From IMG/VR virus record IMGVR_UViG_3300037297_000066, positions 124,001 to 188,000 of that record: 64,000 bases of DNA; one strand, written 5' to 3'. Below the pieces are notes generated by a model. The model ran no database searches, was not told the origin of the DNA, and saw only the letters and a list, made by a program, of their open reading frames with translations. Below are positions 40,134 to 63,604 of the stretch, one piece after another. The first letter of the stretch is position 1. Every line of letters begins with the position of its first letter. Made by a program: the position numbers and the translations under genes.

Positions 40134-40153
40134 CGACGAATAGTACACCATGG

Positions 40154-42067: not shown

Positions 42068-42094
42068 GACCTACCATACACCGTCAGGAGTCTC

Positions 42095-43682: not shown

Positions 43683-43686
43683 ACGA

Positions 43687-44040: not shown

Positions 44041-44100
44041 ACACTCACCGTACACCAAGGGTGGGCTCCCATAGCACACCTGTTTACAGGAAAAAGCCAA

Positions 44101-46762: not shown

Positions 46763-46780
46763 CTGCCCTACAATACACCA

Positions 46781-47395: not shown

Positions 47396-47425
47396 ACCCT
47401 ACTCTACACCGTCCGGCTGAGAGCT

Positions 47426-48019: not shown

Positions 48020-48037
48020 AGCCTACCCTACACCGGT

Positions 48038-49673: not shown

Positions 49674-49779
49674 ATTTCAAGTTCCTGGTTCTAACCTAAC
49701 GTAATCCTGAGAATACGGCTAGAGCCTTTCTTCACTTAAGCCGACTTCCTTCGGTGTATAGGTAAGTAGAGGACTAGCA

Positions 49780-50202: not shown

Positions 50203-50226
50203 GCCCGAATCAGCAAAAACGCTCAG

Positions 50227-50257
50227 GGTTAAGATCCGAGCCCCTCACGTGTAGTAG
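50227..50257 (+). promoter_or_regulatory. 31-bp promoter element
   Basis: GG TTAAGA tccgagcccctcacgtg TAGTAG. Confidence 0.85.
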
Positions 50258-50264
50258 GGAAGTC

Positions 50265-50456
50265 ATGTCTGATTCGAGAGACCACAACTGTGAAGACCAC
50301 CTGGTCTGCAACTGCGACGGGACGCACCATTTTCGGTTCTGCTCCGTCTGCGATCGAGACCTGGGGACGGAAGACTGCCCCCTGCAAGGCAGCTGGCCCT
50401 CGGAAGAGGAACCCTACGGAGAAGATCCCTTCGAGGAGCTTTCAGAAGAGGAGTAG
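50265..50456 (+). CDS. small Cys/His-rich protein
   Basis: 7 nt after a promoter element. Confidence 0.65.
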   Translation: MSDSRDHNCEDHLVCNCDGTHHFRFCSVCDRDLGTEDCPLQGSWPSEEEPYGEDPFEELSEEE

Positions 50457-50461
50457 CCCCC

Positions 50462-50683
50462 ATGCACGGACCCACTCTCAACCCCATCTACAACGACCTG
50501 CTCATCCGGTGGGCCGAATCTGGCTACCCCTCTCCCCCTGAGTGTGAGGACTGCGAGAGAGACCTGACCGGCCAGGAGGTATTCGAGGTGAACCACGGCT
50601 GGGTCTGTGAAGACTGCAGCCACAACCACAACCCACCCTCCCCCTGCATCCTCGAACGAGAAGACTTTCACGCCGACGGTTAA
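50462..50683 (+). CDS. small Zn-ribbon protein
   Basis: CEDC...CEDC; stop codon is the TAA of the promoter element. Confidence 0.65.
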   Translation: MHGPTLNPIYNDLLIRWAESGYPSPPECEDCERDLTGQEVFEVNHGWVCEDCSHNHNPPSPCILEREDFHADG

Positions 50684-50708
50684 GATCCGAGCCCCTCACG
50701 TGTAGTAG
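50678..50708 (+). promoter_or_regulatory. 31-bp promoter element
   Basis: Identical to the 50227 and 17967 copies. Confidence 0.85.
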
Positions 50709-50712
50709 AGAC

Positions 50713-50922
50713 ATGTCCTGGTGTAGAAGAAGTGGAAGCAAGCGATTCCAGAGGAGAGGAGCCCGAGGCCGGCTCGTGAGAAACACCACAGCCAACTGCT
50801 TCGGGTTCCACACTCTCGTCTGTGCCGAATGCCAAAGCTTCGTCACCTACAACGTCGGCTCTCAACGCCCCGAAACCTGCTCCCACTGCGGAAAGCCCCT
50901 GAGAGATGTCAGTGAACGGTGA
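50713..50922 (+). CDS. small Zn-ribbon protein
   Basis: CAEC...CSHC; 4 nt after a promoter element. Confidence 0.55.
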   Translation: MSWCRRSGSKRFQRRGARGRLVRNTTANCFGFHTLVCAECQSFVTYNVGSQRPETCSHCGKPLRDVSER

Positions 50923-51217
50923 ATGGGTCAAGGTACTCGACCCCCAAGCTCAACAAAAAGCCCTGCACCTCACCCGAGGCCGCTATCAACGAGAGGTGAT
51001 CCTGGGCACCCACAACATATCTGGATCGACTCTCAGCGGAAAGGCCCGAGACTACGCCGCTCGATACAAGAGGTCCCGAGAGGCCCTCCTGGAACGGCTC
51101 ACGCAAGCCCAGATCCCCTGGTCTATTGAAGTGCAAGCCCACGGCCGAAAGATCCTGGTCTTCGGAGAGAAGCCCGACTCCCGACCCACCATGTGGGACA
51201 TCATCATAGAGGACTGA
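50906..51217 (+). CDS. hypothetical protein with C-terminal PTMWDII motif
   Basis: Co-oriented ORF. Confidence 0.65.
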   Translation: MSVNGEWVKVLDPQAQQKALHLTRGRYQREVILGTHNISGSTLSGKARDYAARYKRSREALLERLTQAQIPWSIEVQAHGRKILVFGEKPDSRPTMWDIIIED

Positions 51218-51221
51218 ACCC

Positions 51222-51497
51222 ATGCGACATCTACCTGGACCCCCCCGAACCGTCATCACCATCGACCCCGAGTTGCTGGGACCCTTTCACGTGCCTCCCA
51301 AGTGCCAGGGTCAGATCATCGAATTCGCCTTCGCTGCCTACGACGGCGACGGGGTGGTTCGCCGAACCATTGACCTAGGACAGCCAGACTCCGAGCCCGA
51401 ATACTACTGGGGCCACCTGGTGGGGGACTTCGAGCCCTGGAACGACATCCCCGAAGTTGAAGAGTGGCAGTGCGCCAAGATGGGAAACCCACAGTGA
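51222..51497 (+). CDS. hypothetical protein, paralog of 51494..51751
   Basis: ITIDP...G.F..PP...G...VVRR......Y.W..L.G.FEPWN..P.V..W. Confidence 0.75.
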   Translation: MRHLPGPPRTVITIDPELLGPFHVPPKCQGQIIEFAFAAYDGDGVVRRTIDLGQPDSEPEYYWGHLVGDFEPWNDIPEVEEWQCAKMGNPQ

Positions 51498-51751
51498 CCC
51501 CTATCACCATCGATCCCACCCAAATCGGCAAGTTCAATTGCCCGCCCGGCCACGAGGGGCCTCTCTACCGAATCTCCTACGCCCCCTACAAAGGCGAGCG
51601 AGTAGTCCGTCGAGACTTCCACCTGAAGAGTGGTCGAGTCTCCTACTTCTGGAGCGTCCTGCGGGGCCCCTTCGAGCCCTGGAACAAGGCTCCCAAGGTG
51701 GCCGGGTGGAAGCCGGCCATCCTCAGTCAGCCAAAGGAATCCCAGCCATGA
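51494..51751 (+). CDS. hypothetical protein, paralog of 51222..51497
   Basis: Same motif set; GTGA overlap. Confidence 0.75.
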   Translation: MTPITIDPTQIGKFNCPPGHEGPLYRISYAPYKGERVVRRDFHLKSGRVSYFWSVLRGPFEPWNKAPKVAGWKPAILSQPKESQP

Positions 51752-52017
51752 TCACCTCCGTCAAGGAAGTTCACAGCTCGAAAGTAGGGCACGGGCCTAA
51801 CGGGTTGACCTACTACAACTACTTCATCTGTAGGTGTGTAGGAGGAATTCGTCCACGCTACCACCTCTTCCGGGTCAACAACGTGCTGGAGGGGTTCGAG
51901 GTGCTCGGAAACGAGCTCCCCCTCCAAGACTGTCGCCGGATCGTGTCCGAACACGAGCCTCACGGCACCACGATCACCCAACAAAACGTGGACCGGTTCG
52001 CCAAGAGGAATCCATGA
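51748..52017 (+). CDS. hypothetical protein
   Basis: ATGA overlap; MITSVKEVH... Confidence 0.6.
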   Translation: MITSVKEVHSSKVGHGPNGLTYYNYFICRCVGGIRPRYHLFRVNNVLEGFEVLGNELPLQDCRRIVSEHEPHGTTITQQNVDRFAKRNP

Positions 52018-52199
52018 CGAAATCGGAAGCTCTCCAAGAGGCCCGAAGGCTCACAGTCGAGACCGGTAGGAAGTTCGTGGTCCGAGTAGACGGATCCACC
52101 CACTTCGTCTGCCCCCTGCACCGAACGGGACCCAAGAGGTACCTTCACGACCCCGGCATGGCCGCCCTGGGCCTGCTGGTTTCCGAGAGCCTGGGTTAA
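52014..52199 (+). CDS. hypothetical protein
   Basis: MTKSEALQEARRL...; stop is the TAA of the promoter element. Confidence 0.6.
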   Translation: MTKSEALQEARRLTVETGRKFVVRVDGSTHFVCPLHRTGPKRYLHDPGMAALGLLVSESLG

Positions 52200-52224
52200 G
52201 ATCTGGCCCCCTCACGTGTAGTAG
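52194..52224 (+). promoter_or_regulatory. 31-bp promoter element
   Basis: GG TTAAGA tctggccccctcacgtg TAGTAG. Confidence 0.85.
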
Positions 52225-52229
52225 GGGAT

Positions 52230-52565
52230 ATGGCAACCTTAGAAGTCATCGGCCTCCTAGTCCTATTGCTACTGTGGAGTCTGGGAGGGTGGTTCTTCAT
52301 CAACCCTAAGGAACCCAACATGAACATCGAAGCCACCGAATACACCCGAGAAGACGGCGTTGCAGCCTGCAAGATCCGCGGAGGATGGGTCGTCCGCTGC
52401 TTCTACGGCCCCAGCTGGTTCTGGGACCGGAACCTCCAGGACTGGGTCATCTGCAGCCAAGCAGGCTTCAAGCTCTCAAACCTGGCCATGTCCAAGGAAC
52501 AGGCTCTCAGCCTGCTGGAGACCGTCACCTCCAAGCGACCCAGCAAAAAGTCGGCCTCCTTGTAG
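52230..52565 (+). CDS. hypothetical protein with N-terminal hydrophobic helix
   Basis: 5 nt after a promoter element. Confidence 0.6.
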   Translation: MATLEVIGLLVLLLLWSLGGWFFINPKEPNMNIEATEYTREDGVAACKIRGGWVVRCFYGPSWFWDRNLQDWVICSQAGFKLSNLAMSKEQALSLLETVTSKRPSKKSASL

Positions 52566-52717
52566 ACATTTTCCCTAGCTTGTAGACATTGTTTCTAACT
52601 GACACAACTGACATAACCCCAGATTGCCAGAAACTCAGCCAAAAACAGCCCTAAATTTACCCAAAGGCATGTCTACAACCTGAGTTTTGTCAGTTCCGAC
52701 CACCCGAGGGGGAGTCC

Positions 52718-52885
52718 GTGAACAACATCGCAACGCTCGTGCCACTTACCGCCCAAGTGATCTCAACCGGGGTCCCCAGAGAGAACGTGGTGGACGCCTT
52801 GATCCAGAGGGGCCTCACCCCACAAGGGGCCATCCTGATCTACGAAGCCGCCAGCATTTTCCTGACGGGAACCAATCAGGGTTAA
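52718..52885 (+). CDS. 55-aa protein, paralog of 52922..53083 (not in ORF track)
   Basis: MNNIATLVPLTAQVISTGVPRENVVDALIQRGLTPQGAILIYEAASIFLTGTNQG*; GGAG RBS. Confidence 0.75.
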   Translation: MNNIATLVPLTAQVISTGVPRENVVDALIQRGLTPQGAILIYEAASIFLTGTNQG

Positions 52886-52910
52886 GATCCGAGGCCCTCA
52901 CGTGTAGTAG
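52880..52910 (+). promoter_or_regulatory. 31-bp promoter element
   Basis: GG TTAAGA tccgaggccctcacgtg TAGTAG. Confidence 0.85.
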
Positions 52911-52921
52911 AGGTATAGGTC

Positions 52922-53083
52922 ATGGACAACTTCGAAACCCTAACCATTTCGGCAGCCCAAGCCATTTCAATGGGAGTGGATAGGCAAGAAGTCATCCGGT
53001 CTCTCATCGAGCGAGAGCTTACCCCCGAGGAAGCCTACCTCATCTACCAGGCGGCCAAGATCCTGGCCAAGGAGCCCAAGTGA
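52922..53083 (+). CDS. 53-aa protein, paralog of 52718..52885 (not in ORF track)
   Basis: MDNFETLTISAAQAISMGVDRQEVIRSLIERELTPEEAYLIYQAAKILAKEPK*; GTGA overlap with the next gene. Confidence 0.8.
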   Translation: MDNFETLTISAAQAISMGVDRQEVIRSLIERELTPEEAYLIYQAAKILAKEPK

Positions 53084-53592
53084 AAAAGACCACCCGCACC
53101 GTCCGAATCCCAGCGATCATCGCTGCTCACGTTTGCGACCGGCTGCAACAACGTAGCCAACCAGACGACAGCATACGCTCAGAACTCATCCGCCGGATCA
53201 CTGAGCTATCAAGCCAACGGACCGACAAGCTGGAGCTCAACCGACAAGAGGCCCACACCCTCCGAGAAGACCTCCTCCCTTCCCCGGGTAGGAGCAAGCT
53301 AAGCCAGTCCGCTCTTCGCTCCTGGGTGACCCTATGGAGAAGGTGCGGCCAGGTCGTCTACGCTCTCACCGACTGGGTGGTCCGGTTCCTGGAATCCTTC
53401 GAGAAGCACCGGGCCGTCACCAACCAAGACGAGGCAGCCTTGTGGGCCCTGACCGACATCACGGGCGACCGCCCCGTTGTCCAAAATGTCTTGGGAGGTG
53501 TCCGGGTCACCCTCGCCAACCATTCGGCCGTCGGAGAGACCGTCCTCTCCGCCTCCAACAACCTAGTCGCCAGCCTCAAGTACCCGAAGTAA
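53080..53592 (+). CDS. hypothetical protein
   Basis: Coupled 170 aa ORF. Confidence 0.65.
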   Translation: MKKTTRTVRIPAIIAAHVCDRLQQRSQPDDSIRSELIRRITELSSQRTDKLELNRQEAHTLREDLLPSPGRSKLSQSALRSWVTLWRRCGQVVYALTDWVVRFLESFEKHRAVTNQDEAALWALTDITGDRPVVQNVLGGVRVTLANHSAVGETVLSASNNLVASLKYPK

Positions 53593-53635
53593 CCGTGCCC
53601 ACCAAGAAGTGAGCCCCCATGCCCACCAAGTGGGT

Positions 53636-53923
53636 CTAGGGCCAGACGGCTCCGGAAAGCTCTAGGGCTTCTCGAACCCTGCCCATCTCCTCGGAGGACA
53701 CCTGAATCTCAACGATCTTCCCCCCAGGAATGTGGAGATTCAGGTGGTTCTCGACCTTCCCTGGAATCAAGTCTAGGATCGCCCCAGACTCCTCCCTCTT
53801 AGGGTGAACTGTTCGGCTTTCCCGAATGTAGATCATGGCGGGTACTAACAAGTCCACAAAACACCTCACACAATCGGTAGTCACGTTAGCAGGGCTCAGC
53901 CCAACTTGGAGTGAGGGTAGCAC
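53636..53923 (-). CDS. hypothetical protein
   Basis: ORF at the end of a minus-strand run. Confidence 0.5.
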   Translation of the reverse strand: MLPSLQVGLSPANVTTDCVRCFVDLLVPAMIYIRESRTVHPKREESGAILDLIPGKVENHLNLHIPGGKIVEIQVSSEEMGRVREALELSGAVWP

Positions 53924-54099
53924 TGGCGGTAGGCTTGCCGGGTGTGCTCCCGCTCTCGCTCGGACATCATCTCCCAGTCCTTCTCAGCTTGCTCGAATGG
54001 GTAGTGCTCTCCCACCACAGCACGCAGGCCCACAATCATCATAGCCCCCATCATGGTCTCTCTCAACTGTGTGGGGTCAACGGGACGGGACATGGCCAC
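53896..54099 (-). CDS. hypothetical protein
   Basis: GGAGG RBS. Confidence 0.55.
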   Translation of the reverse strand: MAMSRPVDPTQLRETMMGAMMIVGLRAVVGEHYPFEQAEKDWEMMSEREREHTRQAYRQCYPHSKLG

Positions 54100-54553
54100 C
54101 TACCTCCGACCAAAGGGTTCTGAGTAGCTCTACCTCATCTGGTCTCAAGCCTGGTTCGTACCGAGCAGTATCGTAGCGAGCACTTTCCTCGCTTTCAAGG
54201 TGCCTCCCTTCCAAGAAGGCTCGCCCCAACACCGCCTCAGGGGCTAGCTCTTGACAACCCTGATCGTTGAACGGGGACCCGTGAGACCCTCTCTCCTCTG
54301 AGGTGGCCTCCTGCACTGCCCGCAGCACGAACGGAAGCAGCCACAAGGGCCATCTAGACATCGGCTCATAGTATTGATCCCCCGGTATTTTGTACTTCAC
54401 AGATACCTTAGGAGGTTGCCCGGGACAGCTATACACACTGGCTTCGTAACTCACCTCCTCCTCTGAACAAACCAACTCCCTCCTGAAAAGGACCTCACCC
54501 CCTCGCCTATCCACCGGGTGCTGTACTTCCTGCCAAGGCATATCCGAGCTCAT
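54077..54553 (-). CDS. Fam-A paralog (C-domain shortened)
   Basis: MPW..YEASV..WPLWLLPFVLRAVQEA..SPF..DEVELLR. Confidence 0.75.
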   Translation of the reverse strand: MSSDMPWQEVQHPVDRRGGEVLFRRELVCSEEEVSYEASVYSCPGQPPKVSVKYKIPGDQYYEPMSRWPLWLLPFVLRAVQEATSEERGSHGSPFNDQGCQELAPEAVLGRAFLEGRHLESEESARYDTARYEPGLRPDEVELLRTLWSEVGGHVPSR

Positions 54554-54595
54554 ATGTTCATGTCTGAGAAGCCTTCCTCAGGGTCGTAATCCTCG

Positions 54596-54694
54596 GGCTT
54601 TGCATCAAAAGGGGTGATTCTGGCTTGACAAGGCAAGCTTTTTCGGGAGGAATGAGTGGAAACAACACCAGCTCTGCGGTTTTGAAGCAGAGAC
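54596..54694. repeat. dispersed 99-bp repeat, copy 2
   Basis: 89/99 identical to 23285-23383. Confidence 0.95.
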
Positions 54695-55056
54695 TAATCC
54701 TCGGAAGGATCTTCCTCCCCGAAGACTCGCCTACGGACTTCCCGGGCCGACTCGACCGGGCCCCTACCCGTGACACTGTCGGGGGCTTCAAAGCACGATC
54801 TATGAGAAGCCTGGATGGGTGTGGCCTCCTGAACCGTCTTCAAGATCCAAGGGAGTAGGTCAAGAGGCCAATGAGCCGGAGCCCCACTGTTGCCGTAGTT
54901 CCACCAACCAACCTGTATCTTGGGGCTTTTCCCACGACAGACTGTGACAGTGATTATGAACCCCTCATCCGAATCTTCCCCCTCCAAGTACATTCGGCGT
55001 ACCAGCTCCACCTTGTCTTGCTGGATATTCTTCCGGAGGCTCTGTTCCAAGAACAC
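54694..55056 (-). CDS. Fam-A paralog (N-domain only; stop at edge of 99-bp repeat)
   Basis: WPLDLLPWILKTVQEA..FEAPDSV; GTG 6 nt after GGTGTATCGT. Confidence 0.75.
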   Translation of the reverse strand: MFLEQSLRKNIQQDKVELVRRMYLEGEDSDEGFIITVTVCRGKSPKIQVGWWNYGNSGAPAHWPLDLLPWILKTVQEATPIQASHRSCFEAPDSVTGRGPVESAREVRRRVFGEEDPSED

Positions 55057-55077
55057 TCCCTCACGATACACCAAAGC

Positions 55078-55485
55078 TCACCCACAAGCCTTAAGAATCC
55101 TCTCCCAGGCCGTGGGGGGCAACTTCTGGTCCAGATGGGTCAGGCAGTCGTAGACCTGTCGAACCACATCCAGACGCCAGCTAGCAGGGCCATGAGACCT
55201 GGTAGGTCTGAGGGATAGCAGGAAATCCCCTACCTCTCCCACCTGCTGCTTGGTTAACGATACCAGAGCATTGAAGTAGAGGCGCCGTTCTTGATCCAAA
55301 CTGTCCTGGATACTCCCATTGAAATGCACATGCTCGTAGTGGTGCTCAGGGAGAAGCCCACAACAAATACACCGAGCTTTCTTAGCATCTTCCAAAGCTC
55401 GTAGCTCCTCCCCAGTGGCCCTCTCGTTTGCTTCCCGACGCTCGGGGGACATCCTAGCCCGCAAGGCTGAAAACCGCTCTGGCAT
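55078..55485 (-). CDS. hypothetical protein with C-terminal PTAWERIL motif
   Basis: N-terminus FSALRARMSPERR; CICC. Confidence 0.65.
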   Translation of the reverse strand: MPERFSALRARMSPERREANERATGEELRALEDAKKARCICCGLLPEHHYEHVHFNGSIQDSLDQERRLYFNALVSLTKQQVGEVGDFLLSLRPTRSHGPASWRLDVVRQVYDCLTHLDQKLPPTAWERILKACG

Positions 55486-55490
55486 ACCTT

Positions 55491-56051
55491 CTAGGGCTCC
55501 CTAGCACGAAATTCCGAGACCCGGTCCAGAATGGCCTCCGTGATCTCCTCTGGAGAGTATCGATCGGCCAAACGCTCCCGAAAAAGCACTTCCTCCCTCG
55601 TCAACCGATAAGGGTACCGGTCAACCGTACGCCGGTACTCCGCCTCGTCCCACCGTTCCATAAGGCACGGACGAGTCAACACACGGGGAACTCCCTCATA
55701 GTAGCTCCCCAAGGCTACGTTGTCGTCCCATGCCTGCCTCACCAAAGCCCTGCAGTCGTCACACATCGACCCTTCTCCGAAAGATCCCCTATAGGAAAAC
55801 TTGGGGCTGACCATCGTCAAGATCTCCAGCACGAACGGGATCACCTCTTCAGGAAAGGCGAGCACTCGATTCCAACGGTCGTTCAAAGACTCCCTCCTGA
55901 ACAGTACAACCGTATGTCTCCCCCCTGATCGAATCGTGCTATTCTGAGTCTGGATCTGATACTGAGTCGAGCTTTCTTCCTCGGCCAGTATCAGGTAGAC
56001 GGCAGGGGCGCTCTCCTGCTTGAACCTCTCGGCCACTTTCCAGGCCATCAC
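55491..56051 (-). CDS. Fam-A paralog (N+C)
   Basis: MMAW..FP..IPFVLE..SFGEGS..LGSYY..WDEAEY..EEVLFR..EEITEAIL. Confidence 0.85.
   Translation of the reverse strand: MMAWKVAERFKQESAPAVYLILAEEESSTQYQIQTQNSTIRSGGRHTVVLFRRESLNDRWNRVLAFPEEVIPFVLEILTMVSPKFSYRGSFGEGSMCDDCRALVRQAWDDNVALGSYYEGVPRVLTRPCLMERWDEAEYRRTVDRYPYRLTREEVLFRERLADRYSPEEITEAILDRVSEFRAREP
55534..55606. repeat. 73-bp patch shared with 56091-56163 (68/73)
   Basis: Direct comparison of adjacent Fam-A 3' ends. Confidence 0.95.
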
Positions 56052-56707
56052 GCCTCCTCAGCCGATCGGCGGTTTCTCAGGACCAGCATAGCCTCCGTGA
56101 TCTCCTCTGGAGAGTATTGATCGGCCAAGCGTTCTCGAAAAATCACTTCCTCCCTCGTCAACCACGTATGCTCCTGGCTAGTCAGGTCCCCCGGATCACC
56201 AGCAGCTCGTCGGTACCCCTCTTCGGTCCACTCAGGGTCACTAACCCTGATCAGTTTCCGAGTGGTTGTGCTGTCAGACATCCAATAAGAGGCCGTCAAC
56301 TCTCCGAACAAGGACCGAAAACCCCCAACCACCTCGAAAGCAGCCTCCACACGCTCCTGAAGATCCTCCAAAGTGGGTTCGAAAGGAGATGACTCCGCCC
56401 CGAACACCACCTGTTGAACCGCCTCTTTTTCGAAGGCCGAATCAAGCGGCACCACCGACTGTTCAGCTTTTTGCACCAACCGGATCAGGTAAGGCATTAA
56501 ACTAGTAGGCCACTGTATGGGTTGATGCCACGTCCCTTGTTCTCGATCCATCATCAAGACCTCAACCATCGCCTGCTTGGTAGGCAAGTGAAACCGGACA
56601 AGAATCCGGAACCGAACCTTCTCGTCTTCATCCCAAATCAGACACTTCCCGTACGAGATGAAGGTCGGAAACCTCATAGAGGGCTCTACAGTCTCGATCC
56701 AGGCCAT
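56048..56707 (-). CDS. Fam-A paralog (N+C)
   Basis: MAWI..WPTSLMPYL..AFEKEAV..DPEWTEEGY..EEVIFR..EEITEAML. Confidence 0.85.
   Translation of the reverse strand: MAWIETVEPSMRFPTFISYGKCLIWDEDEKVRFRILVRFHLPTKQAMVEVLMMDREQGTWHQPIQWPTSLMPYLIRLVQKAEQSVVPLDSAFEKEAVQQVVFGAESSPFEPTLEDLQERVEAAFEVVGGFRSLFGELTASYWMSDSTTTRKLIRVSDPEWTEEGYRRAAGDPGDLTSQEHTWLTREEVIFRERLADQYSPEEITEAMLVLRNRRSAEEA
56211..56240. repeat. 30-bp patch identical to 57056-57085
   Basis: CGGTACCCCTCTTCGGTCCACTCAGGGTCA in both (DPEWTEEGYR). Confidence 0.95.
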
Positions 56708-57525
56708 CAGTTATCCTCGGGCTCCAACACCTCTTCCAGATCCGTCAAAGCTTGCTCGCAATCACTCACCACCTCGGACAAATACGGCCACCCTTCCTCC
56801 CGAGCTCTCTGAATCCGAGCTAGTACCTCCCCCATACTCCCAAGAAGCTGGATATCCTCTCGTTGTCCTTCAGAGGCAGGCAGCTGAGCCCACAACCTTA
56901 GAACCCGCTCATGCCCCGGCCGGTTGCTTCGATAGTCATTCAAGACCCTCAAGATCATGTCTTGAATGTCCTCAAACATAAATCCTTCTCGAAGAGCAGC
57001 CAACCAAAAGTCTTGTTCATCTCTCTGCAGCCACTCTGTATGTTGGGTGGCCGTACGGTACCCCTCTTCGGTCCACTCAGGGTCATTGAAAGCAATCCAA
57101 CGCTCACCGTCCGAGTAAGTCCCGATCCCTTGCTCAAACCCAACATTCACCCAAACCAAAGCCTCTAGTTGGTCAAAGCTCACTCCCCTCTCGACTTCAG
57201 AACGATCGTCGTCCTCGTTGGGCTCACCCTGAACACTCTTCTCCGTAAAGACCGAGAACAGATCAACACACGCCCCCTCAAGCTCCTGAAAGATCCGGAA
57301 CAGGCTCGGAATCAGGCTCGGAGGCCAGTAGCGAGCAATTTCCCACAGGGACATGCTGGGGACCCAACGCTCTACCTCCACCCCTGTCCTGCCTGAAACC
57401 GTCTGGAAGTCTACTCGATAACGGACATTCTCATCCTCACTCCAAACCAATACCCACTGATGAAGCTGCGTGTCCACGTCCGGATGTATCTCAAAAGGGA
57501 CTTCTTGCGTGATCCAGGCCATCAC
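56707..57525 (-). CDS. Fam-A paralog (N+C plus C-terminal helical extension)
   Basis: MMAWI..WPPSLIP..VFTEKSV..IGTY..DPEWTEEGY.. Confidence 0.85.
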   Translation of the reverse strand: MMAWITQEVPFEIHPDVDTQLHQWVLVWSEDENVRYRVDFQTVSGRTGVEVERWVPSMSLWEIARYWPPSLIPSLFRIFQELEGACVDLFSVFTEKSVQGEPNEDDDRSEVERGVSFDQLEALVWVNVGFEQGIGTYSDGERWIAFNDPEWTEEGYRTATQHTEWLQRDEQDFWLAALREGFMFEDIQDMILRVLNDYRSNRPGHERVLRLWAQLPASEGQREDIQLLGSMGEVLARIQRAREEGWPYLSEVVSDCEQALTDLEEVLEPEDN

Positions 57526-58148
57526 CCACCTGCAGTCTCCGGGTTGATCACCAAAAGGCTTCGTCTAGCCCTCAGAACCTCCAGGACAGCCTCCAGAATA
57601 ACTACGCTGGTAACCGTCCCTTCACGCCACAACCTACGACAGAACTCTAGTTCACTACCACTAATCCGGGTCTGGTACCCGTAAGCTATCCGATAGCCCT
57701 CCTCATTCCATCCGGAATCCGTGAGCGTTATCCACCGACGCCCAGAGTGATCCCAGAAGGCCCCCGTCACTACCCCCTCATCGTAAGCCCGCTCGATGCG
57801 CTCCCAGAGCCCCTCATCAACAGTCCCCTCACCCCGGGGACCCGCTGCTTCCGAAACTGAGCCCTCCCCAAAGATAGGGCTCTCAAAAGCCACGCTCTCT
57901 GGCTCAGCCTCTTGAGCCAGCCGGATCAATAACGGAAGCAGGTTCTTGGGCCAATCATTGGTCGGACGCCAGTAACTCTCTTCGTAATCCCACCGCTCAA
58001 CCTCAACCCTAGAATACCCCTTCGGGAAAGTTCGAATCGACAGCTTGTACTGGACGTCGTGGTCCTCATCCCAAGTCAGCACCTTCTCATAGAGACGGAA
58101 GTTGTCCCCTATCTCGGGAGGAAAAGACCTTTCAAGCCACGCCATCAC
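57522..58148 (-). CDS. Fam-A paralog (N+C)
   Basis: MMAW..WPKNLLPLL..IFGEGSV..DSGWNEEGY..SELEF..EAVLEVL. Confidence 0.85.
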   Translation of the reverse strand: MMAWLERSFPPEIGDNFRLYEKVLTWDEDHDVQYKLSIRTFPKGYSRVEVERWDYEESYWRPTNDWPKNLLPLLIRLAQEAEPESVAFESPIFGEGSVSEAAGPRGEGTVDEGLWERIERAYDEGVVTGAFWDHSGRRWITLTDSGWNEEGYRIAYGYQTRISGSELEFCRRLWREGTVTSVVILEAVLEVLRARRSLLVINPETAGG

Positions 58149-58152
58149 GGGC

Positions 58153-58383
58153 CTAGTTTAGAAGGCTGCCAGAACCGGCCTTCTCCAAGACGGTGAAAAA
58201 CACCTCCCGGACCAAAGTCCTCTCCTGGGAGGAGAGTCGGGGTCTTTCATCTTCCAGGTACTGCAGAAAGTCCTCCTGGAGCGCCTCAGCGGAATCCCCC
58301 TCAGCAAACGCCTCCTGTAGCAGGCGAATCACCTCCTGAAGAACCAGCCAATGACGCTCTTCTGACCGCTCAACGATAGACAT
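58153..58383 (-). CDS. small helical protein, paralog of 58429..58662
   Basis: E..RLL.E....GDSAEALQEDFL.....VF; ATG 5 nt after GGTGTACGGT. Confidence 0.75.
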   Translation of the reverse strand: MSIVERSEERHWLVLQEVIRLLQEAFAEGDSAEALQEDFLQYLEDERPRLSSQERTLVREVFFTVLEKAGSGSLLN

Positions 58384-58428
58384 GCCTTACCGTACACCAC
58401 ACGACCCCCTCAAAGGCTACAGGATCTC

Positions 58429-58662
58429 TCAGTTGAGAGATCGAAAACGGTTGGGCCTGTGCTTGGCTAGCTCAATGGCCTTGAAGACCATCTTTCTAGA
58501 CTGCTCTGCCACAGCAGGAGGGATCTTGGCTCTTCTCACAAAGTCCAAGAAATCCTTCTGCAGAGCCTCCGGACTCTCCCCCCGATCGATCTCTTCTCGC
58601 AAGATCCTGGAGAGCTCCCGGACAAAAACCGTGCCTACTGTAGCCTCATCCAGTTCTGCCAT
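58429..58662 (-). CDS. small helical protein, paralog of 58153..58383
   Basis: EL.RIL.E....GESPEALQKDFL.....VF. Confidence 0.75.
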   Translation of the reverse strand: MAELDEATVGTVFVRELSRILREEIDRGESPEALQKDFLDFVRRAKIPPAVAEQSRKMVFKAIELAKHRPNRFRSLN

Positions 58663-58857
58663 ACATGAGTCTACCCCAGGTCTTACGATCATGCCCCAAA
58701 TATGCCGAAGCCCCCCAGGATTGGGAGGCTTCGAACACCGACCGGCTGTCGTGTGCACCCATTGGGCATGCCGGCCGAACCAACCACCAAGAGGGTATGA
58801 CGTACAACCCTCCTGAGGATCGCTCCATCAGGGCCGACGTGCAACCCAAAAACGACC

Positions 58858-59430
58858 TCACCTAGCCCGACACTGGCGAATCACCTCTTCTGTGACCATA
58901 TCGGCCCCGTACGTGTCGTCCAACACCGTTCTCCAATCCCCTGCAGCGTGAAGTAACTCGGCTCTGTAACTACGGTATGTCTCAGCATCCCAACTACCCA
59001 TAGAAGGGTTAATCCACCGAGCTTCCTCCGGGCTCCAGTACGAGCCTATTTCTGGAAGCCGTTGAGAAACCACCTCCTCAAGCCTACGAGAAGGAGAGAC
59101 AACACGAACAGCGTCTTCTTCAAACCGCTCGGTAATAGCCAGAGCCGGGCCTCTTCGACGAGCACTCAACTCCAGTATTTTCAACAAGACCGGAATGAAA
59201 GAGACAGGAAGGTAGGCCACCGAAAAAGGTGTGTTGATATCCGGAAAATCAGGGTCCTCAGGTTGCTGCAGAAAGTGAACCACAGGCTCCTCCCGGGAGC
59301 TGTCCCCTGAAAGGGCCCTTCCTACTACCACGATGTGTGAGAACCCAGAGTCAGGGACCTTCCACCGAAGGGAACCGTCTTCTTCCTGCCCCACGAAAAC
59401 CGGATCAGCATACACGACCTCATCAACCAC
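58858..59430 (-). CDS. Fam-A paralog (N+C)
   Basis: PVSFIPVLL..FEEDAV..IGSYW..WDAETY..VTEEVI; GTG 6 nt after GGTGTATAGT. Confidence 0.8.
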   Translation of the reverse strand: MVDEVVYADPVFVGQEEDGSLRWKVPDSGFSHIVVVGRALSGDSSREEPVVHFLQQPEDPDFPDINTPFSVAYLPVSFIPVLLKILELSARRRGPALAITERFEEDAVRVVSPSRRLEEVVSQRLPEIGSYWSPEEARWINPSMGSWDAETYRSYRAELLHAAGDWRTVLDDTYGADMVTEEVIRQCRAR

Positions 59431-59552
59431 CTCCCCACTATACACCAGCAAGGGCCAATGCGGCCACGAGAACGGCCCCTAAGAGCCCTCAGAAGGTACG
59501 CCCTTCCCCTGGACCCTGGAGATCCTAAAGCCCAAGGAAGGGAGGCTCTACG

Positions 59553-59765
59553 TCACGGAAGCACGAAAACGTCGTAGCGGTTCCCCTCAGGGTCCGTAGC
59601 GTAGTGCCAGTAGTCACCTTCCGGGAGCCCCGCCTTCTCAGCTAGCTTACGGTTCTGCGTCCTATCCAGAACCGCCGCAGTACCTATGGCAAAGACGTGA
59701 ATCTCTGACGTCGAATTCGTGTACCGGGCATGTAGAGTGATCTTGATCTTGTTCATACCCCCCAA
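59553..59765 (-). CDS. hypothetical protein
   Basis: Directly downstream of a promoter element (likely start MNKIK...). Confidence 0.55.
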   Translation of the reverse strand: MGGMNKIKITLHARYTNSTSEIHVFAIGTAAVLDRTQNRKLAEKAGLPEGDYWHYATDPEGNRYDVFVLP

Positions 59766-59792
59766 TACACCTGAGAGAGCCAGATCTTAACC
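59762..59792 (-). promoter_or_regulatory. 31-bp promoter element
   Basis: GG TTAAGA tctggctctctcaggtg TATTGG. Confidence 0.8.
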
Positions 59793-60168
59793 CGGACCCC
59801 AAATGCACCGAAGCCCCCCACGAGGGGAGGCTTCAACTACCGGCCAGGTGTCCTGTCTACCAAACGTTCACTCGGCCGTTACCAACCACCGGGAAAGGCG
59901 GCTGACCCCCCCAATGGTTGCTCCATTTCGTCGGCCAGGCAAGCTCTATCGACACTCACGGAAGGTCAGGCCATGTCCCGGGGGGACCTCACGCCCAAAT
60001 CGAAGCACAGATCGAGCACTTCCTACCCAACGACCTTTCTGGGCAGGAGTGAACCCACACCGACGAAGCTGGGTCCAGTATTGAGCGGTATCGCCCTCCG
60101 CAAAGTACAGGATGGAGGGCGTTGGAGGAATCGAACTGTTGCGACTCATGGGTATTCCCTTTCTCCCT

Positions 60169-60199
60169 ACTCTACACCTGAGAAGCCCAGATCTTAACC
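60169..60199 (-). promoter_or_regulatory. 31-bp promoter element
   Basis: GG TTAAGA tctgggcttctcaggtg TAGAGT. Confidence 0.8.
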
Positions 60200-60296
60200 C
60201 GGATCTGCTCGGCGACGCTCCCAAGCCTCCAGGATCACCTGGGTGATTTCCTCCTGACTAAAATACCTGCCCGCCTCCTCTCGAAACGAGATCTCA
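60195..60296 (-). pseudogene. orphan Fam-A C-terminal fragment
   Basis: Start-less frame reads (H)EISFREEAGRYFSQEEITQVILEAWERRRADPG*, duplicating the C-terminus of 60294..60875. Confidence 0.7.
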
Positions 60297-60875
60297 TGCC
60301 TGCCCCACCGAAGGAGCTTGTGCCGTGAGTCGTCGCTCCCACTCCAGTAGAATGGCGTGAGTTATCTCCTCTTGTTCGAACATCCTCCCAAGAGTGAGTC
60401 GAAACCGAACCTCTGGAGCAGTGAATTGGTAGGTGCTCGCCCGATCCTCATAGATCTCCGGCTGCCACCCAGGATCTGTAGGCAACATCTCGAAAGCGAT
60501 GTGATAGGCTCCCAGCATCACCCCTTGGTCGATGGCCTCCCCCACGACCTCCATCAGGTAGTCCTCGTTCAACTCCCTAGCCGCCCTCAAAAACGGTCTT
60601 TCACTCTCCCGGCAAGCCTGAGGATCCCCAAAAAGCCCTTCACAACGAACGGGTAACCCCACCGCTTCCAAGATGAAGGGGAGCAACCCAACGGGAACAT
60701 CGGCATGGGAACATGGCCCATCAGGAAGCATTATGTGCCACGCATAGTAGTGTGTAGCCTTTCGTCTGTCAGGCGTCCGAAAAACTCGGATCTCATATCC
60801 CGACAGGGACTCCTCACTCTCGGCCACCGTGTAGATGTCGAGAAGATCCTCCTGTTTGAAGCCAATGACCTTCAT
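60294..60875 (-). CDS. Fam-A paralog (N+C)
   Basis: MKVI.F..AESE..YEIRV..PVGLLPFILEA..LGAY..DPGW.PEIY..EVRFR..EEITHAIL. Confidence 0.85.
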   Translation of the reverse strand: MKVIGFKQEDLLDIYTVAESEESLSGYEIRVFRTPDRRKATHYYAWHIMLPDGPCSHADVPVGLLPFILEAVGLPVRCEGLFGDPQACRESERPFLRAARELNEDYLMEVVGEAIDQGVMLGAYHIAFEMLPTDPGWQPEIYEDRASTYQFTAPEVRFRLTLGRMFEQEEITHAILLEWERRLTAQAPSVGQA

Positions 60876-61435
60876 CCGCTGGCCCTCTCAGCCATGACTT
60901 CCAGGATCACCCGGGTGACCAGATTCTGATCAAACCGAGCCCCCAACTCCAATCGAAACCTGATCTCGCTCTGACTCAGCTGCGAGATCGCTCGACGACG
61001 ACACACCTCCTCGTAACCCTCTCGGGTCCAGGTGGGGTCCTCTCGGGTCCAAGTCACGAAAGTGTTGGAAGGCAGCGTAGTCCTAGCCTCGGAAGAGTAG
61101 GAACCGAACTCTACCCCCTGCCCAAAAGCTTCTCGCACCTCAGCCTTCAAGGCAGCTACGTCCAACCAAGGTCCTGCCTCGAAAGGCCCCTCGTACGGAG
61201 TCTCTTTCTCACTCATCGCTTCTAAGATGAAGGGGAACAGAGAAGTCGAAATGTCTGCGGGAGAGGCATGGGCTATCCCATCAGAAGAGGTCCGGAGCCA
61301 GACCTGGCAGACCCTACCCTTCTGCTTACCAGTCGGCTGAAGCACCCGGATCTCGTAGCTACAAGGAGCGTCTTCGCTCTCAGCCACCACATGGATGTCT
61401 AAACCACCCTCCTTCCGGAAGTCAATGACCCTCAC
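60872..61435 (-). CDS. Fam-A paralog (N+C)
   Basis: (M)RVIDF..AESE..YEIRV..LFPFILEA..FGSY..DPTWTREGY..SEIRFR..VTRVIL. Confidence 0.85.
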   Translation of the reverse strand: MRVIDFRKEGGLDIHVVAESEDAPCSYEIRVLQPTGKQKGRVCQVWLRTSSDGIAHASPADISTSLFPFILEAMSEKETPYEGPFEAGPWLDVAALKAEVREAFGQGVEFGSYSSEARTTLPSNTFVTWTREDPTWTREGYEEVCRRRAISQLSQSEIRFRLELGARFDQNLVTRVILEVMAERASG

Positions 61436-61985
61436 TCGGCCCCCTTCGTCGCTCCCACACCTCGACAATGGTGCTCGTGATCTCGCCCTGATTGTAGAAA
61501 CGCTCCCACTCAAATCGAAACCGAAGCTCACGAGAAGTCAAGCGGCGAGGGTTAGTCGTAACCACTTCCTGGTAAGAATGCCAAGACCACCTAGTATTGG
61601 ACGGGGAAATCCAGTCCGCTGAGGAATGCTCGTAACTCCCAAGTGTCGGGCTCTCTCCAAACTCCAACTGATGCTCAATCAGCTGCACCAAGTACTCATG
61701 GCCTACGAGCGGGCCGATCAAGTCAGGCTCGGTTTGGAACACACCCCTAAGTAGCTCAGAACCCTGAGAGACAGCCTGCAATATGATGGGGAGCAGGGTC
61801 ACTGGAACACTTGTGTGGTCAGACGGTCCATCAGGCAGGCTACGTAGAAACACCTCATAGTTGACAGCCTTACTTCCATCAGCCGCCCGAAGCACTCGAA
61901 TCACATACGCCGCTGGAGATTCTTCGCTTCCACTCACCACGTACGTGGAGAAAAAGCCCTCCCTGTAAAAATCGATGACCTTCAC
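61422..61985 (-). CDS. Fam-A paralog (N+C)
   Basis: (M)KVIDF..Y.IRV..PVTLLPIILQA..LGSY..W..Y..ELRFR..EITSTI. Confidence 0.85.
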   Translation of the reverse strand: MKVIDFYREGFFSTYVVSGSEESPAAYVIRVLRAADGSKAVNYEVFLRSLPDGPSDHTSVPVTLLPIILQAVSQGSELLRGVFQTEPDLIGPLVGHEYLVQLIEHQLEFGESPTLGSYEHSSADWISPSNTRWSWHSYQEVVTTNPRRLTSRELRFRFEWERFYNQGEITSTIVEVWERRRGPSEGH

Positions 61986-62518
61986 AGGCCCTCCCCAAAC
62001 TCGTACCCCAGAAAGTTCAGAATAGCTCGGGTGATGTCGTCTTGAAGGAAGCTCCGGCCTTGAGCGACTCGAAACTGGAGCTCCTCCGGTGAAAGCAAGT
62101 GGCTCCCGGCCAACGCTAGCCTCTGGTACACCGCAACGTCCCACTCACCATCATCAGGACGGTACCACGTAGCCGCAGCGCCCAAGAAGTACTCCCCTAA
62201 CCTAGAGCCCCCGTGGAATGCCTCCTCAACCGCCTCCACCAAATGCACGTACCGGGCCCCCGGCTCGCCTCGGAAGGGCCCCTCATAGGAAGGCCCCGAC
62301 TCCTTCCTCGACAGCGCTTCCATGATGAAAGGCGTTAGAGGGATCGGGATCTGACTTAGATCCTGAGGGATCTCCCTTCCGCTGGAAGTGACCGCCCACA
62401 CAGTGAAGACCCCTCCCTTTGGAACCACTTGGATCTCGTACCAGGAAGTCGAATCCTCGCTCTCGGCTACCCTGTACATATCCGTTCCCACCAGCTTGCT
62501 GGAAGCGACGATCTTCAT
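61982..62518 (-). CDS. Fam-A paralog (N+C)
   Basis: AESE..YEI..PIPLTPFIMEAL..GPF..LGEY..D.EWD..VY..EELQFR..DITRAIL. Confidence 0.85.
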   Translation of the reverse strand: MKIVASSKLVGTDMYRVAESEDSTSWYEIQVVPKGGVFTVWAVTSSGREIPQDLSQIPIPLTPFIMEALSRKESGPSYEGPFRGEPGARYVHLVEAVEEAFHGGSRLGEYFLGAAATWYRPDDGEWDVAVYQRLALAGSHLLSPEELQFRVAQGRSFLQDDITRAILNFLGYEFGEGL

Positions 62519-63039
62519 GCCTGCCCCCGAGCCCTACTCACCACCTCCACAATGGCTCGGGTGATAGCCTCTGGAGAGTAGGCGTTTTCATGAGACCGAC
62601 GTAATTGCCGTTCTTGCTCCGTCAAGTCTAGATGGTAATGGCTGACAACGTATTGGTACACCTCAGGATCCCAATCAGAATCACTGGGGTAGTGCCACCT
62701 TTCCGCAGCCAAGTAACCCCCCAAGTTGTGCCAGAGCTCCACCTCCCTCTCAACCACACTCACCAACAGGTCGTAGCCATACTCAGGACCCTGAGGGTCT
62801 CCTTGGAAGACCCCCTGGTAAGGCCCAAGCTCCCCTTTCGACAAGCTCAGAGCTTCCAGAATGGAGGGCAGCAGGAACAACGGTATAGCCCCAATCCGGA
62901 CAGGAGAGCCCCCCTCAAGGACCTCGTAGAGATACACCACCATCCCCACCCGGATCTGGTAGCTAACCCGAGAGGCTCTGCTCTCAGCCACCGTGTAGGT
63001 GTCTAAGCCCTCCACGGTCTCAACGCCAATGAGCTTCAC
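62515..63039 (-). CDS. Fam-A paralog (N+C)
   Basis: AES..YQIRV..PLFLLPSILEAL..LGGY..DSDWDPEVY..ERQLR..AITRAIVEV. Confidence 0.85.
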   Translation of the reverse strand: MKLIGVETVEGLDTYTVAESRASRVSYQIRVGMVVYLYEVLEGGSPVRIGAIPLFLLPSILEALSLSKGELGPYQGVFQGDPQGPEYGYDLLVSVVEREVELWHNLGGYLAAERWHYPSDSDWDPEVYQYVVSHYHLDLTEQERQLRRSHENAYSPEAITRAIVEVVSRARGQA

Positions 63040-63599: not shown

Positions 63600-63604
63600 C
63601 CATC

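What the first reader, a model, noticed from the sequence alone, without database searches (positions are those of the whole stretch)
55534..57085. Patchy near-identity between neighbouring paralogs suggests ongoing gene conversion or shuffling
Seen: gene 56048..56707 shares a 73-bp patch (68/73) with the neighbour on one side (55534-55606 vs 56091-56163) and a perfect 30-bp patch with the neighbour on the other (56211-56240 vs 57056-57085). The rest of these genes align only at the protein-motif level. Inference: recent segmental exchange creates mosaic C-domains, a diversification route that needs no reverse transcriptase.
Basis: partly seen in the sequence, partly recalled or inferred. Interest (0 to 1): 0.65.

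Follow-up and report, generated by a model that had tools for sequence, protein, structure and literature searches.

The report
Recombining paralog array in huge phage
A 437-kb phage carries about 51 tandem copies of an unknown two-domain gene, and comparison with a sister strain shows that these very diverged copies still swap short patches and whole domains by recombination at short conserved motifs, without any reverse transcriptase.

Summary
The genes are otherwise 33-37% identical in protein.

The patches exceed chance. With proteins held fixed and synonymous codons resampled, exact matches of 20 nt or more between paralogs number 8, against 0.2-0.4 expected. Synonymous divergence is 0.16-0.20 inside the patches and 0.71-0.74 outside. 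Independent contigs from a second sample reproduce the sequence, so this is not misassembly.

The genes belong to an array of about 51 tandem paralogs, about 44 kb, in a complete 437-kb phage genome with direct terminal repeats. The family has no Pfam, PHROG or PDB match.

A sister strain, 96-99% identical in the background, shows three kinds of change:
- clustered substitutions whose alleles exactly match other paralogs (16 clusters, against about 1.3 in a control);
- an exact chimera of one gene's N-domain with its neighbour's C-domain, lacking one 541-nt unit;
- whole-domain replacements, including the C-domain of gene 57522-58148, with no donor found.

The genome has no reverse transcriptase but does encode RecA-like and Rad50-like proteins.

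Caveats: the two cited patches predate the strain split. N-domains are swapped as often as C-domains. The protein's function is unknown.

The parts
55491..56051 (-). Gene A, family member (186 aa)
   Evidence: ORF; family HMM E=2.8e-61.
56048..56707 (-). Gene B, family member (219 aa). It shares one patch with A and another with C. Its stop overlaps A's start by 4 nt.
   Evidence: AlphaFold model with pLDDT 84.6: N-domain 1-81, disordered linker 82-112, C-domain 113-219.
56707..57525 (-). Gene C, family member (272 aa)
57522..58148 (-). Gene D, family member (208 aa)
55523..55606 (-). A/B patch, copy in gene A. It encodes the C-terminal helices (LTREEV...EEITEA).
   Evidence: 76/84 identical to 56080-56163. 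pS 0.20 versus 0.71 outside. The two strains differ here at 6/84 sites.
56080..56163 (-). A/B patch, copy in gene B
   Evidence: 0/84 differences between the strains.
56211..56240 (-). B/C patch, copy in gene B. It encodes the DPEWTEEGYR motif.
   Evidence: 30/30 identical to 57056-57085.
57056..57085 (-). B/C patch, copy in gene C
   Evidence: The sister-strain copy differs at 1 site.
57525..57854 (-). C-domain of gene D, replaced between strains by a homologous domain. The two versions are about 55-59% identical in nucleotides and 34% in protein. The block runs from the FGEGSV linker motif to the stop codon.
   Evidence: In one search the X3 contig skips 328 nt and has 337 other letters in their place.
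58912..59146 (-). C-domain core of gene 58858-59451, replaced between strains. The N-domain and the last 12 residues stay identical.
   Evidence: P0003 versus P0004/P0017; joint.
61239..61780 (-). One repeat unit (541 nt) that is present here and absent in the sister strain. There, the N-domain of E1 (about 61780-61985) is fused to the C-domain of E2 (60872-61239) at the LLPFILEA motif.
   Evidence: The chimera is identical to each parent on its own side. About 20 nt at the junction match a third paralog (60660-60685).
62539..62565 (-). 27-nt exact patch shared with a paralog just beyond the window (67387-67413 in window numbering). The sister strain carries a different allele that matches 63068-63090 instead.
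63068..63090 (-). 23-nt exact patch shared with a paralog at 68803-68825 (window numbering, beyond the window's end)
26214..64000 (-). The part of the tandem array that lies in the window. The array has about 51 members at genome 150.2-194.3 kb and continues about 6 kb past the window's end. All members are on the minus strand, and many are joined by 4-nt start/stop overlaps. A 6-kb gap lies at 48019-54077.
   Evidence: HMM searches; gene layout.

Best explanation
The patches are footprints of non-allelic homologous recombination inside a tandem array of about 51 paralogs. The array lies in a complete 437-kb phage genome with direct terminal repeats.

The paralogs encode a lineage-restricted, soluble, acidic two-domain protein of unknown function. 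It has an N-terminal beta-sheet plus helix, a disordered linker and an alpha/beta C-domain. The copies have diverged to about 45-50% nucleotide identity. Only short motif-coding islands remain similar enough to pair: the inter-domain LLPFILEA helix, the FGEGSV linker, the DPxWxxExY motif and the C-terminal ExITxAIL helix.

Exchange anchored on these islands gives three products.
1. Very short conversion tracts, about 15-85 nt.
2. Unequal crossovers that remove or add a whole unit and fuse the N-domain of one gene to the C-domain of the next.
3. Replacement of whole domains between strains, with breakpoints at the same motifs.

What is shown: the patches, their low synonymous divergence, post-split conversion-like clusters, the chimera, the domain replacements, and the absence of a reverse transcriptase.

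What is inferred:
- The phage's own RecA/UvsX-like recombinase and Rad50-like protein drive the exchange, or template switching during recombination-dependent replication does.
- The array serves host interaction, for example anti-defence or takeover proteins in an arms race.
- The shuffling is adaptive rather than a neutral by-product.

The confidence given (0.85) is for the recombination explanation of the patches and mosaics. The guess about the family's function deserves no more than about 0.3.
For: - Patches confirmed.
- Excess over two codon-aware nulls.
- pS of 0.16-0.20 inside the patches against 0.71-0.74 outside.
- Identical sequence in a second sample's contigs.
- Sister-strain loci L001-L004 are 96% identical outside divergent blocks and 43% inside them.
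- Strain-specific substitution clusters match other paralogs: 16 of 249 clusters, against a mean of about 1.3 and a maximum of 3 for mock alleles. At 62539-62565 each strain's allele matches a different paralog.
- Exact chimera of E1's N-domain and E2's C-domain, with loss of one unit.
- Domain replacements in gene D and gene 58858-59451, seen in three assemblies.
- No RVT_1 in the genome.
- RecA family hit of 151 bits at genome 322168-322980, and an AAA_23/Rad50-like hit beside it.
- The genes are real and under constraint: pooled pN/pS between strains is 0.37.
- A distant relative (L006, 62% GC) also carries the family as a tandem array, 11 of 19 genes.
Against: - The two cited patches predate the strain split, so they do not themselves show current activity.
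- The mock-allele control ignores coding constraint. Parallel synonymous changes in a shared motif could explain some of the 16 clusters, though not those with 4-5 changes.
- No donor was found for the large replaced domains, either in this genome or among 5.8 billion proteins. Those blocks could be old alleles kept by selection, or imports from unsampled phages, rather than products of exchange within the array.
- The sister-strain contigs all come from what may be a single data set assembled three ways.
- The distant relative L006 shows no nucleotide patches.
- Function is untested, and fold searches gave nothing above Z 5.8.
Confidence: 0.85

Rival explanations
1. Conserved protein motifs plus codon bias give these nucleotide matches by chance, with no exchange.
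For: All patches lie on the most conserved motifs of the family alignment. Codon usage is biased for some residues, for example GAG for Glu.
Against: Two nulls that keep the proteins and the codon usage give 0.2-0.4 matches of 20 nt or more, against 8 observed, and none of 30 nt or more. At identical residues, use of the same codon is 83-89% inside the patches and 33-39% outside.
Confidence: 0.03
2. The patches are relics. A, B and C are young duplicates that diverged fast everywhere else under positive selection, or the patch DNA is held constant by a nucleotide-level function such as an RNA structure, a promoter or a binding site.
For: The patches lie about 30-120 nt upstream of the next gene's start. 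pN/pS between strains is near 1 for gene A.
Against: Synonymous sites outside the patches are saturated (pS 0.71-0.74), and positive selection on protein does not cause that. No promoter-like or terminator-like site lies in the patches. Their RNA folds are no more stable than shuffles (z -1.2, -0.2, -1.6 and 0.0). Different gene pairs share different patches, and alleles flip between paralog states across strains.
Confidence: 0.05
3. Assembly artefact: a metagenome assembler stitched paralogs or strains together at short repeats.
For: The genome comes from a metagenome, the array is repetitive at motif level, and at least two haplotypes coexist in the sister sample (L002 versus L004 overlap).
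Against: The shared islands are 15-30 nt exact, mostly at or below typical assembly word sizes (the Logan index uses 31-letter words). A Logan contig of the source run spans 54617-59600 with 0 differences, and contigs from a second sample match exactly across both B patches and the C patch. The sister chimera and replaced blocks recur in JGI, ENA and Logan assemblies.
Confidence: 0.03
4. The large replaced domains come from allelic recombination with other, unsampled phage genomes, or are old balanced alleles. They do not come from exchange among the array's own copies. Only the short patches are intra-array events.
For: No paralog in this genome or in the sister loci resembles the alternative C-domains at nucleotide level; the best protein identity is 34-40%. 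Only two alleles of gene D exist among 5.8 billion proteins. pS varies from 0 to 0.135 among neighbouring genes, as expected if strains recombine.
Against: The full array of the sister strain is not available, so an internal donor there cannot be excluded. The chimera proves that intra-array crossovers do create new domain combinations.
Confidence: 0.5

Closest known systems
Interlocus (ectopic) gene conversion and unequal crossing-over in tandem multigene families, i.e. concerted or birth-and-death evolution. Reviewed in the gene-conversion literature listed, e.g. PMC10503786 and PMC3924832.
   Same: There are patches of high identity with low synonymous divergence inside diverged paralogs. 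There are also hybrid genes, copy-number change of exactly one unit, and alleles in one strain that match another paralog.
   Different: The copies here are only about 45-50% identical in nucleotides. Tracts are therefore confined to motif islands of 15-85 nt, much shorter than usual. The setting is a phage genome, not a cellular chromosome.
Motif-anchored swapping in T-even phage tail-fibre adhesin genes (Tetart et al., 'recombination between conserved motifs swaps adhesin specificity'). I recalled this from my own knowledge. The title phrase occurs in the reference lists of papers found, but I did not read the paper itself.
   Same: A phage uses short conserved motifs that flank variable segments as recombination points to exchange functional modules.
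   Different: That case involves one locus exchanged between phages. This one involves about 51 tandem copies within one genome. There is no sequence or fold relation to tail fibres.
Multigene families and 'genomic accordions' of large eukaryotic DNA viruses (poxvirus K3L amplification, ASFV MGF families). From my own knowledge; not checked in the paper library.
   Same: Tandem paralog arrays make up a sizeable share of a large viral genome. Copy number varies between strains, and a role in host interaction is presumed.
   Different: Accordion copies are recent and nearly identical, whereas these are ancient and diverged. The host is prokaryotic and the family is unrelated.
Diversity-generating retroelements of phages (the Bordetella phage BPP-1 type). 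From my own knowledge.
   Same: A phage-encoded route to variation in a protein's C-terminal region.
   Different: DGRs need a reverse transcriptase and a template repeat, and they change adenine positions only. This genome has no RVT_1. Only 4 of the 8 A/B patch differences (positions listed, read against the four sequences printed there) have adenine in B, and the replaced blocks contain indels.
Cassette-based antigenic variation (Neisseria pilE/pilS, Borrelia vlsE). From my own knowledge.
   Same: Segmental, short-tract, non-reciprocal-looking transfer among many diverged tandem copies builds mosaics.
   Different: Those systems have one expressed locus plus silent, truncated cassettes. Here every copy is a complete ORF with its own start, many are translationally coupled, and the copies are under purifying selection.

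Membership tests
Interlocus gene conversion among tandem paralogs | Tracts of high identity bounded on both sides by diverged sequence | tested here: met
   The 84-nt and 30-nt patches have flanks at about 45-50% identity. Five further patches of 23-44 nt lie elsewhere in the array.
Interlocus gene conversion among tandem paralogs | Synonymous divergence lower inside tracts than outside | tested here: met
   pS 0.20 versus 0.71 (p=0.0013) and 0.16 versus 0.74 (p=0.0026).
Interlocus gene conversion among tandem paralogs | More shared tracts than protein conservation and codon usage predict | tested here: met
   8 matches of 20 nt or more, against 0.23 and 0.36 expected; 5 matches of 27 nt or more, against 0.005 and 0.
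Interlocus gene conversion among tandem paralogs | Population evidence: a strain-specific allele equals the sequence of another paralog | tested here: met
   16 clusters against 0-3 in mock controls. At 62539-62565 both alleles match different paralogs.
Interlocus gene conversion among tandem paralogs | Non-reciprocal transfer, with the donor unchanged | tested here: inconclusive
   B's patch is identical in both strains, while A's differs at 6/84 sites. That fits B as donor, but without an outgroup the direction cannot be set.
Unequal crossing-over (non-allelic homologous recombination) | A hybrid gene identical to one parent upstream of the junction and to the other downstream, with a unit-length copy-number change | tested here: met
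   L004 7988-8545 combines the N-domain of E1 with the C-domain of E2. The 541-nt unit at window 61239-61780 is absent.
Diversity-generating retroelement | A reverse transcriptase gene in the element or genome | tested here: not met
   No RVT_1 match in the complete 437-kb genome; the control genomes do give matches.
Diversity-generating retroelement | Differences between template and variable repeat confined to adenines of the template | tested here: not met
   Only 4 of the 8 A/B differences (positions listed, read against the four sequences printed there) have adenine in B. The replaced blocks carry indels and are about 45% divergent.
Silent-cassette antigenic variation system | One expression site plus promoterless or truncated donor cassettes | tested here: not met
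   All members are complete ORFs with start codons, many with 4-nt start/stop overlaps. Pooled pN/pS is 0.37.
Recent gene amplification ('genomic accordion') | Near-identical recent copies | tested here: not met
   Paralogs are 17-37% identical in protein, and synonymous sites are saturated.
Any described protein family for the array's product | Significant sequence or fold match | tested here: not met
   No hits in Pfam, PHROGs or NCBIfam. An HMM search of 1.84 billion representatives found 73 proteins, about 56 of them from this phage or near strains. The best PDB matches were Z 5.8 for the whole model and 5.1 for the C-domain, and Atlas TM-scores were below 0.5.

The most novel reading that the evidence does not exclude
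The array is a phage-encoded combinatorial library. N- and C-domains would be independently exchangeable binding modules. The motif-coding islands would be kept similar at nucleotide level because they act as recombination joints. The phage's own recombinase would then keep producing new N-C combinations and mosaic domains that track variable host targets such as defence systems. This would be a diversity generator that needs no reverse transcriptase, and it occupies 10% of the genome.
Probability: 0.15. Interest if true: 0.85.

Novelty: new variant of a known kind. Interest (0 to 1): 0.6.

Why it matters
Huge phages carry much unexplained coding capacity. Here a tenth of a 437-kb genome is one uncharacterised family that turns over by domain swapping between closely related strains.

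The case shows that homologous exchange still operates between copies that share only 15-30-nt islands of identity. It also gives a concrete, RT-free route to protein diversification in phages.

If the family proves to be a host-interaction or anti-defence repertoire, the array would be a natural system for studying modular arms-race evolution. It would also be a source of new inhibitor folds. The mechanism itself, ectopic conversion and unequal crossover, is textbook, so the interest lies in the setting, the scale and the direct strain-level evidence.

Tried and rejected
- **Close relatives in phage collections.** None was found. The INPHARED blastn search and the IMG/VR scan with a single protein both came back empty, and the IMG/VR scan with the alignment returned an error: no stretch was conserved enough to search with. 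The one metagenome scan returned only the sister contig I already held.
- **Word-index protein searches.** Searches with B and with the sister D allele found only themselves and each other. No donor emerged for the replaced C-domain.
- **P0066, a 2092-aa hit.** This is a HEAT-repeat protein that matches only the LLPxLL helix. I judge it spurious.
- **Fold searches.** None gave a usable match. Foldseek against PDB had best E 0.07. VIA wide gave Z 5.8 (TipC2) for the whole model and Z 5.1 (an HMG/winged-helix-like domain) for the C-domain. Atlas TM-scores were 0.41 or lower. The protein-atlas feature search gave no usable hit.
- **Nucleotide-level function of the patches.** I found no support. 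There are no promoter or terminator matches, no unusual RNA stability and no Rfam family in the window.
- **C-domains as the preferred target.** This was rejected. N- and C-domain identity between strains do not differ.
- **DGR.** Rejected, because the genome has no reverse transcriptase.
- **RecT and ERF annealing proteins.** Not found.
- **Terminase_6N.** Not found. The virus call therefore rests on the IMG/VR record with direct terminal repeats, the PHROG hits and the tRNA/tmRNA load.
- **Patches in the distant relative L006.** None was seen.
Full report
**1. The observation**

All the genes concerned are on the minus strand: A 55491-56051 (186 aa), B 56048-56707 (219 aa), C 56707-57525 (272 aa) and D 57522-58148 (208 aa).

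The repeat finder reports 55523-55606 versus 56080-56163 as 84 nt at 90% identity, and 56211-56240 as identical to 57056-57085. In protein-guided codon alignments the pairs are 25-37% identical in protein and 41-49% in nucleotides.

The A/B patch encodes the last two helices of the C-domain. The B/C patch encodes the motif DPEWTEEGYR.

**2. Is it more than chance?**

The patches lie on conserved motifs, so the right null keeps the proteins and varies only the synonymous codons. I used two such nulls, each with 200 replicates over all 51 paralogs. One draws codons from family usage. The other shuffles synonymous codons within each gene.

| Exact match length | Observed | Expected | Expected |
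|---|---|---|---|
| 20 nt or more | 8 | 0.23 | 0.36 |
| 27 nt or more | 5 | 0.005 | 0 |
| 30 nt or more | 2 | 0 | 0 |

- For B-A, pS is 0.20 in the patch and 0.71 outside. The same codon is used at 19/23 versus 12/31 identical residues (Fisher p=0.0013).
- For B-C, pS is 0.16 versus 0.74 (8/9 versus 18/54, p=0.0026).

Misassembly is also excluded. A Logan contig of the source run spans 54617-59600 without a difference. Contigs from a second wetland sample cover gene B and the C patch without a difference.

**3. What the genes are**

The window is bases 124001-188000 of a single 437,331-bp contig. It is an IMG/VR virus record with direct terminal repeats, rated complete. It carries 53 tRNAs and a tmRNA and has PHROG hits to phage nucleases.

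An HMM built from ten neighbours finds 47 members in the genome, and 51 after one iteration. All lie on the minus strand between genome 150.2 and 194.3 kb, which is window 26214 to about 70271. Many are joined by 4-nt start/stop overlaps. The array takes up about 10% of the genome.

The family has no Pfam, PHROG or NCBIfam match. An exhaustive HMM search of 1.84 billion representatives finds 73 proteins. About 56 of them are this phage's own or come from near strains. A distant relative from another metagenome (L006, 62% GC) also carries the family in tandem, as 11 of 19 genes.

The AlphaFold model of B has pLDDT 84.6. It shows a five-strand sheet plus helix (residues 1-81), a disordered linker (82-112) and an alpha/beta C-domain (113-219). 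No fold search gave a convincing match: best Z was 5.8 for the whole model and 5.1 for the C-domain, and Atlas TM-scores were 0.41 or lower.

The proteins are acidic (median pI 5.05) and have no membrane-like segment. Between strains the pooled pN/pS is 0.37, so they are real genes under constraint. Function remains unknown.

**4. The sister strain**

Cluster look-ups and contig look-ups recovered four loci of a closely related phage. In window numbering they cover:
- L001: 24827-38473
- L002: 54137-58912
- L003: 55225-57165
- L004: 58690-70098

Outside divergent blocks the two genomes are 96% identical. Inside the blocks identity is 43%. The same variant is seen as a 9274-nt Logan contig in a marine-sediment run (X3). 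Three kinds of difference bear directly on the finding.

(a) Short clustered substitutions whose alleles match other paralogs.
- At 62539-62565 this genome's allele equals a paralog at 67387-67413. The sister's allele, four changes away, equals the paralogs at 63068-63090 and 68803-68825.
- At the 5' edge of the A/B patch (about 55592-55606) this genome's A equals B, while the sister's A differs at three sites.
- In all, 16 of 249 clusters (two or more differences within 15 nt) have an allele with an exact 15-mer in another paralog. Mock third-base alleles give a mean of about 1.3 and a maximum of 3. That control ignores coding constraint, so a few of the 16 may be parallel changes. The clusters with 4-5 changes cannot be.

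(b) An unequal crossover. The sister gene at L004 7988-8545 is identical to E1 (window about 61780-61985) up to the LLPFILEA motif and identical to E2 (60872-61239) after it. The 541 nt at 61239-61780 are missing. About 20 nt at the junction match a third paralog, at 60660-60685. This is a direct case of N-C domain shuffling with a copy-number change.

(c) Whole-domain replacement.
- Gene D's C-domain (57525-57854) is replaced by 337 unrelated-looking but homologous nucleotides, 34% identical in protein.
- The core of the C-domain of gene 58858-59451 (58912-59146) is likewise replaced. Its N-domain and last 12 residues stay identical.
- The breakpoints fall at the FGEGSV linker motif, at the gene end and at the C-terminal helix.
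- No donor exists in this genome, in the loci, or among 5.8 billion proteins.
- N-domains are replaced as well, for example in the genes at 28043, 30926, 63605 and 65350. Overall, N- and C-domain identities between strains do not differ (Wilcoxon p=0.97).

**5. Age of the two cited patches**

In the 84-nt A/B patch, seven of the A-versus-B differences are the same in both strains. B's copy is identical in both strains, and A's differs at six sites. Patch pS of about 0.2 compares with a between-strain pS of 0.064. That exchange is therefore several times older than the strain split.

The B/C patch is 30/30 here and 29/30 in the sister, so it too predates the split. The evidence that the process is ongoing comes from the events in section 4(a), not from these two patches.

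**6. Mechanism**

The genome has no reverse transcriptase. It has no RecT or ERF annealing protein. It does encode a RecA-family recombinase (151 bits, genome 322168-322980) and an adjacent Rad50-like AAA_23 protein.

I infer that the phage's own recombination machinery, or template switching during recombination-dependent replication, pairs non-allelic copies at the few motif islands that remain similar. This would yield very short conversion tracts, unit-length crossovers and domain swaps. The enzymes involved were not tested.

The alternatives do not hold:
- A nucleotide-level function for the patches is not supported: no promoter or terminator matches, no special RNA stability and no Rfam hit.
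- Relics of recent duplication are excluded by the saturated synonymous sites outside the patches.

**7. Comparison with known systems and novelty**

This is interlocus gene conversion plus unequal crossing-over in a tandem multigene family, which is a known kind of process. It works like the motif-anchored module swapping described for T-even tail-fibre genes. In scale it resembles the multigene families of large eukaryotic DNA viruses.

It is not a DGR, not a silent-cassette antigenic-variation system and not a recent amplification. A defining feature of each was tested and not met; see the membership table.

What is unusual:
- the setting, a 437-kb phage;
- the scale, about 51 copies and 10% of the genome;
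- the extreme divergence of the partners, which limits tracts to 15-85 nt;
- the direct strain-level evidence for all three recombination products.

I rate it a new variant of a known kind, with interest 0.6.

**8. Limits**

- The sister-strain contigs may derive from one data set assembled three ways.
- Only contigs, not raw reads, could be laid on the window.
- Without an outgroup the direction of transfer is unknown.
- The origin of the large replaced domains is open. I give about even odds that they were imported from unsampled phages or are old balanced alleles, rather than products of exchange within the array.
- The function of the family is a guess: host interaction, perhaps anti-defence.

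Noticed in passing
window 54596-54696 and 23285-23386; further copies at genome 57082-57183, 205116-205214, 226107-226206, 229506-229613, 420316-420415: A dispersed intergenic repeat of about 100 nt, with 7 copies at 74-91% identity. It shows as a depth spike in every run laid. It contains two short hairpins and has no Rfam match. Its role is unknown; it may be regulatory.
   Followed up: partly
window 55078-55485 (-): A non-family gene of 135 aa sits inside the array, directly downstream of gene A. It has a weak Endonuclease VII/HNH-like match (PF02945, E=0.039, below the cut-off) and a Cys/His-rich segment. A nuclease here could seed local recombination, but the match is too weak to rely on.
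   Followed up: no
window 55698 and 56070 (sister-strain insertions): The sister strain has in-frame tandem duplications of 18 nt in gene A and 21 nt in gene B, next to the A/B patch. These suggest replication slippage in the same region.
   Followed up: partly
window 56119-56153: A short contig from the source run matches only these 35 nt of the B patch and then runs on, unlike the window, on both sides (loose ends). The patch sequence may therefore occur in a third context in the same sample.
   Followed up: no
window 58690-58912 (overlap of L002 and L004): Two contigs from the same JGI sample differ here: one is 100% and the other 95.5% identical to the window. At least two haplotypes of the sister phage coexist in that sample.
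   Followed up: no
window 9730-11391 (+): A 553-aa adenylosuccinate-synthase-like protein. It hits PHROG 1211 at E=5e-71. The NCBIfam purA models score 88-152 bits, far below their cut-offs, and PurZ scores 34 bits. It is a divergent PurA/PurZ-type enzyme, and whether it points to modified DNA bases is open.
   Followed up: partly
window 11384-12265 (+): A protein-kinase-like ORF with weak matches to defence-associated Ser/Thr kinases (MADS6 at E=9e-11, PglW).
   Followed up: no
genome 257557-257714 and 278193-303261 (outside the window): Two adjacent tRNAs with anticodon CUA (amber-suppressor type) lie here, along with a cluster of about 50 tRNAs and a tmRNA. TAG still ends 83 of 272 ORFs of 200 aa or more and 11 of the 51 family genes. 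I assumed no recoding and did not test for stage-specific read-through.
   Followed up: no
window 48019-54077: A 6-kb interruption of the array with higher GC (0.58-0.59) and only short or unannotatable ORFs on either strand.
   Followed up: no
window 12748-14013 (-) and 3444-5180 (+): An HNH endonuclease (PHROG 374, E=1.9e-33) and a nuclease (PHROG 13933, E=2.2e-58) lie upstream of the array.
   Followed up: no
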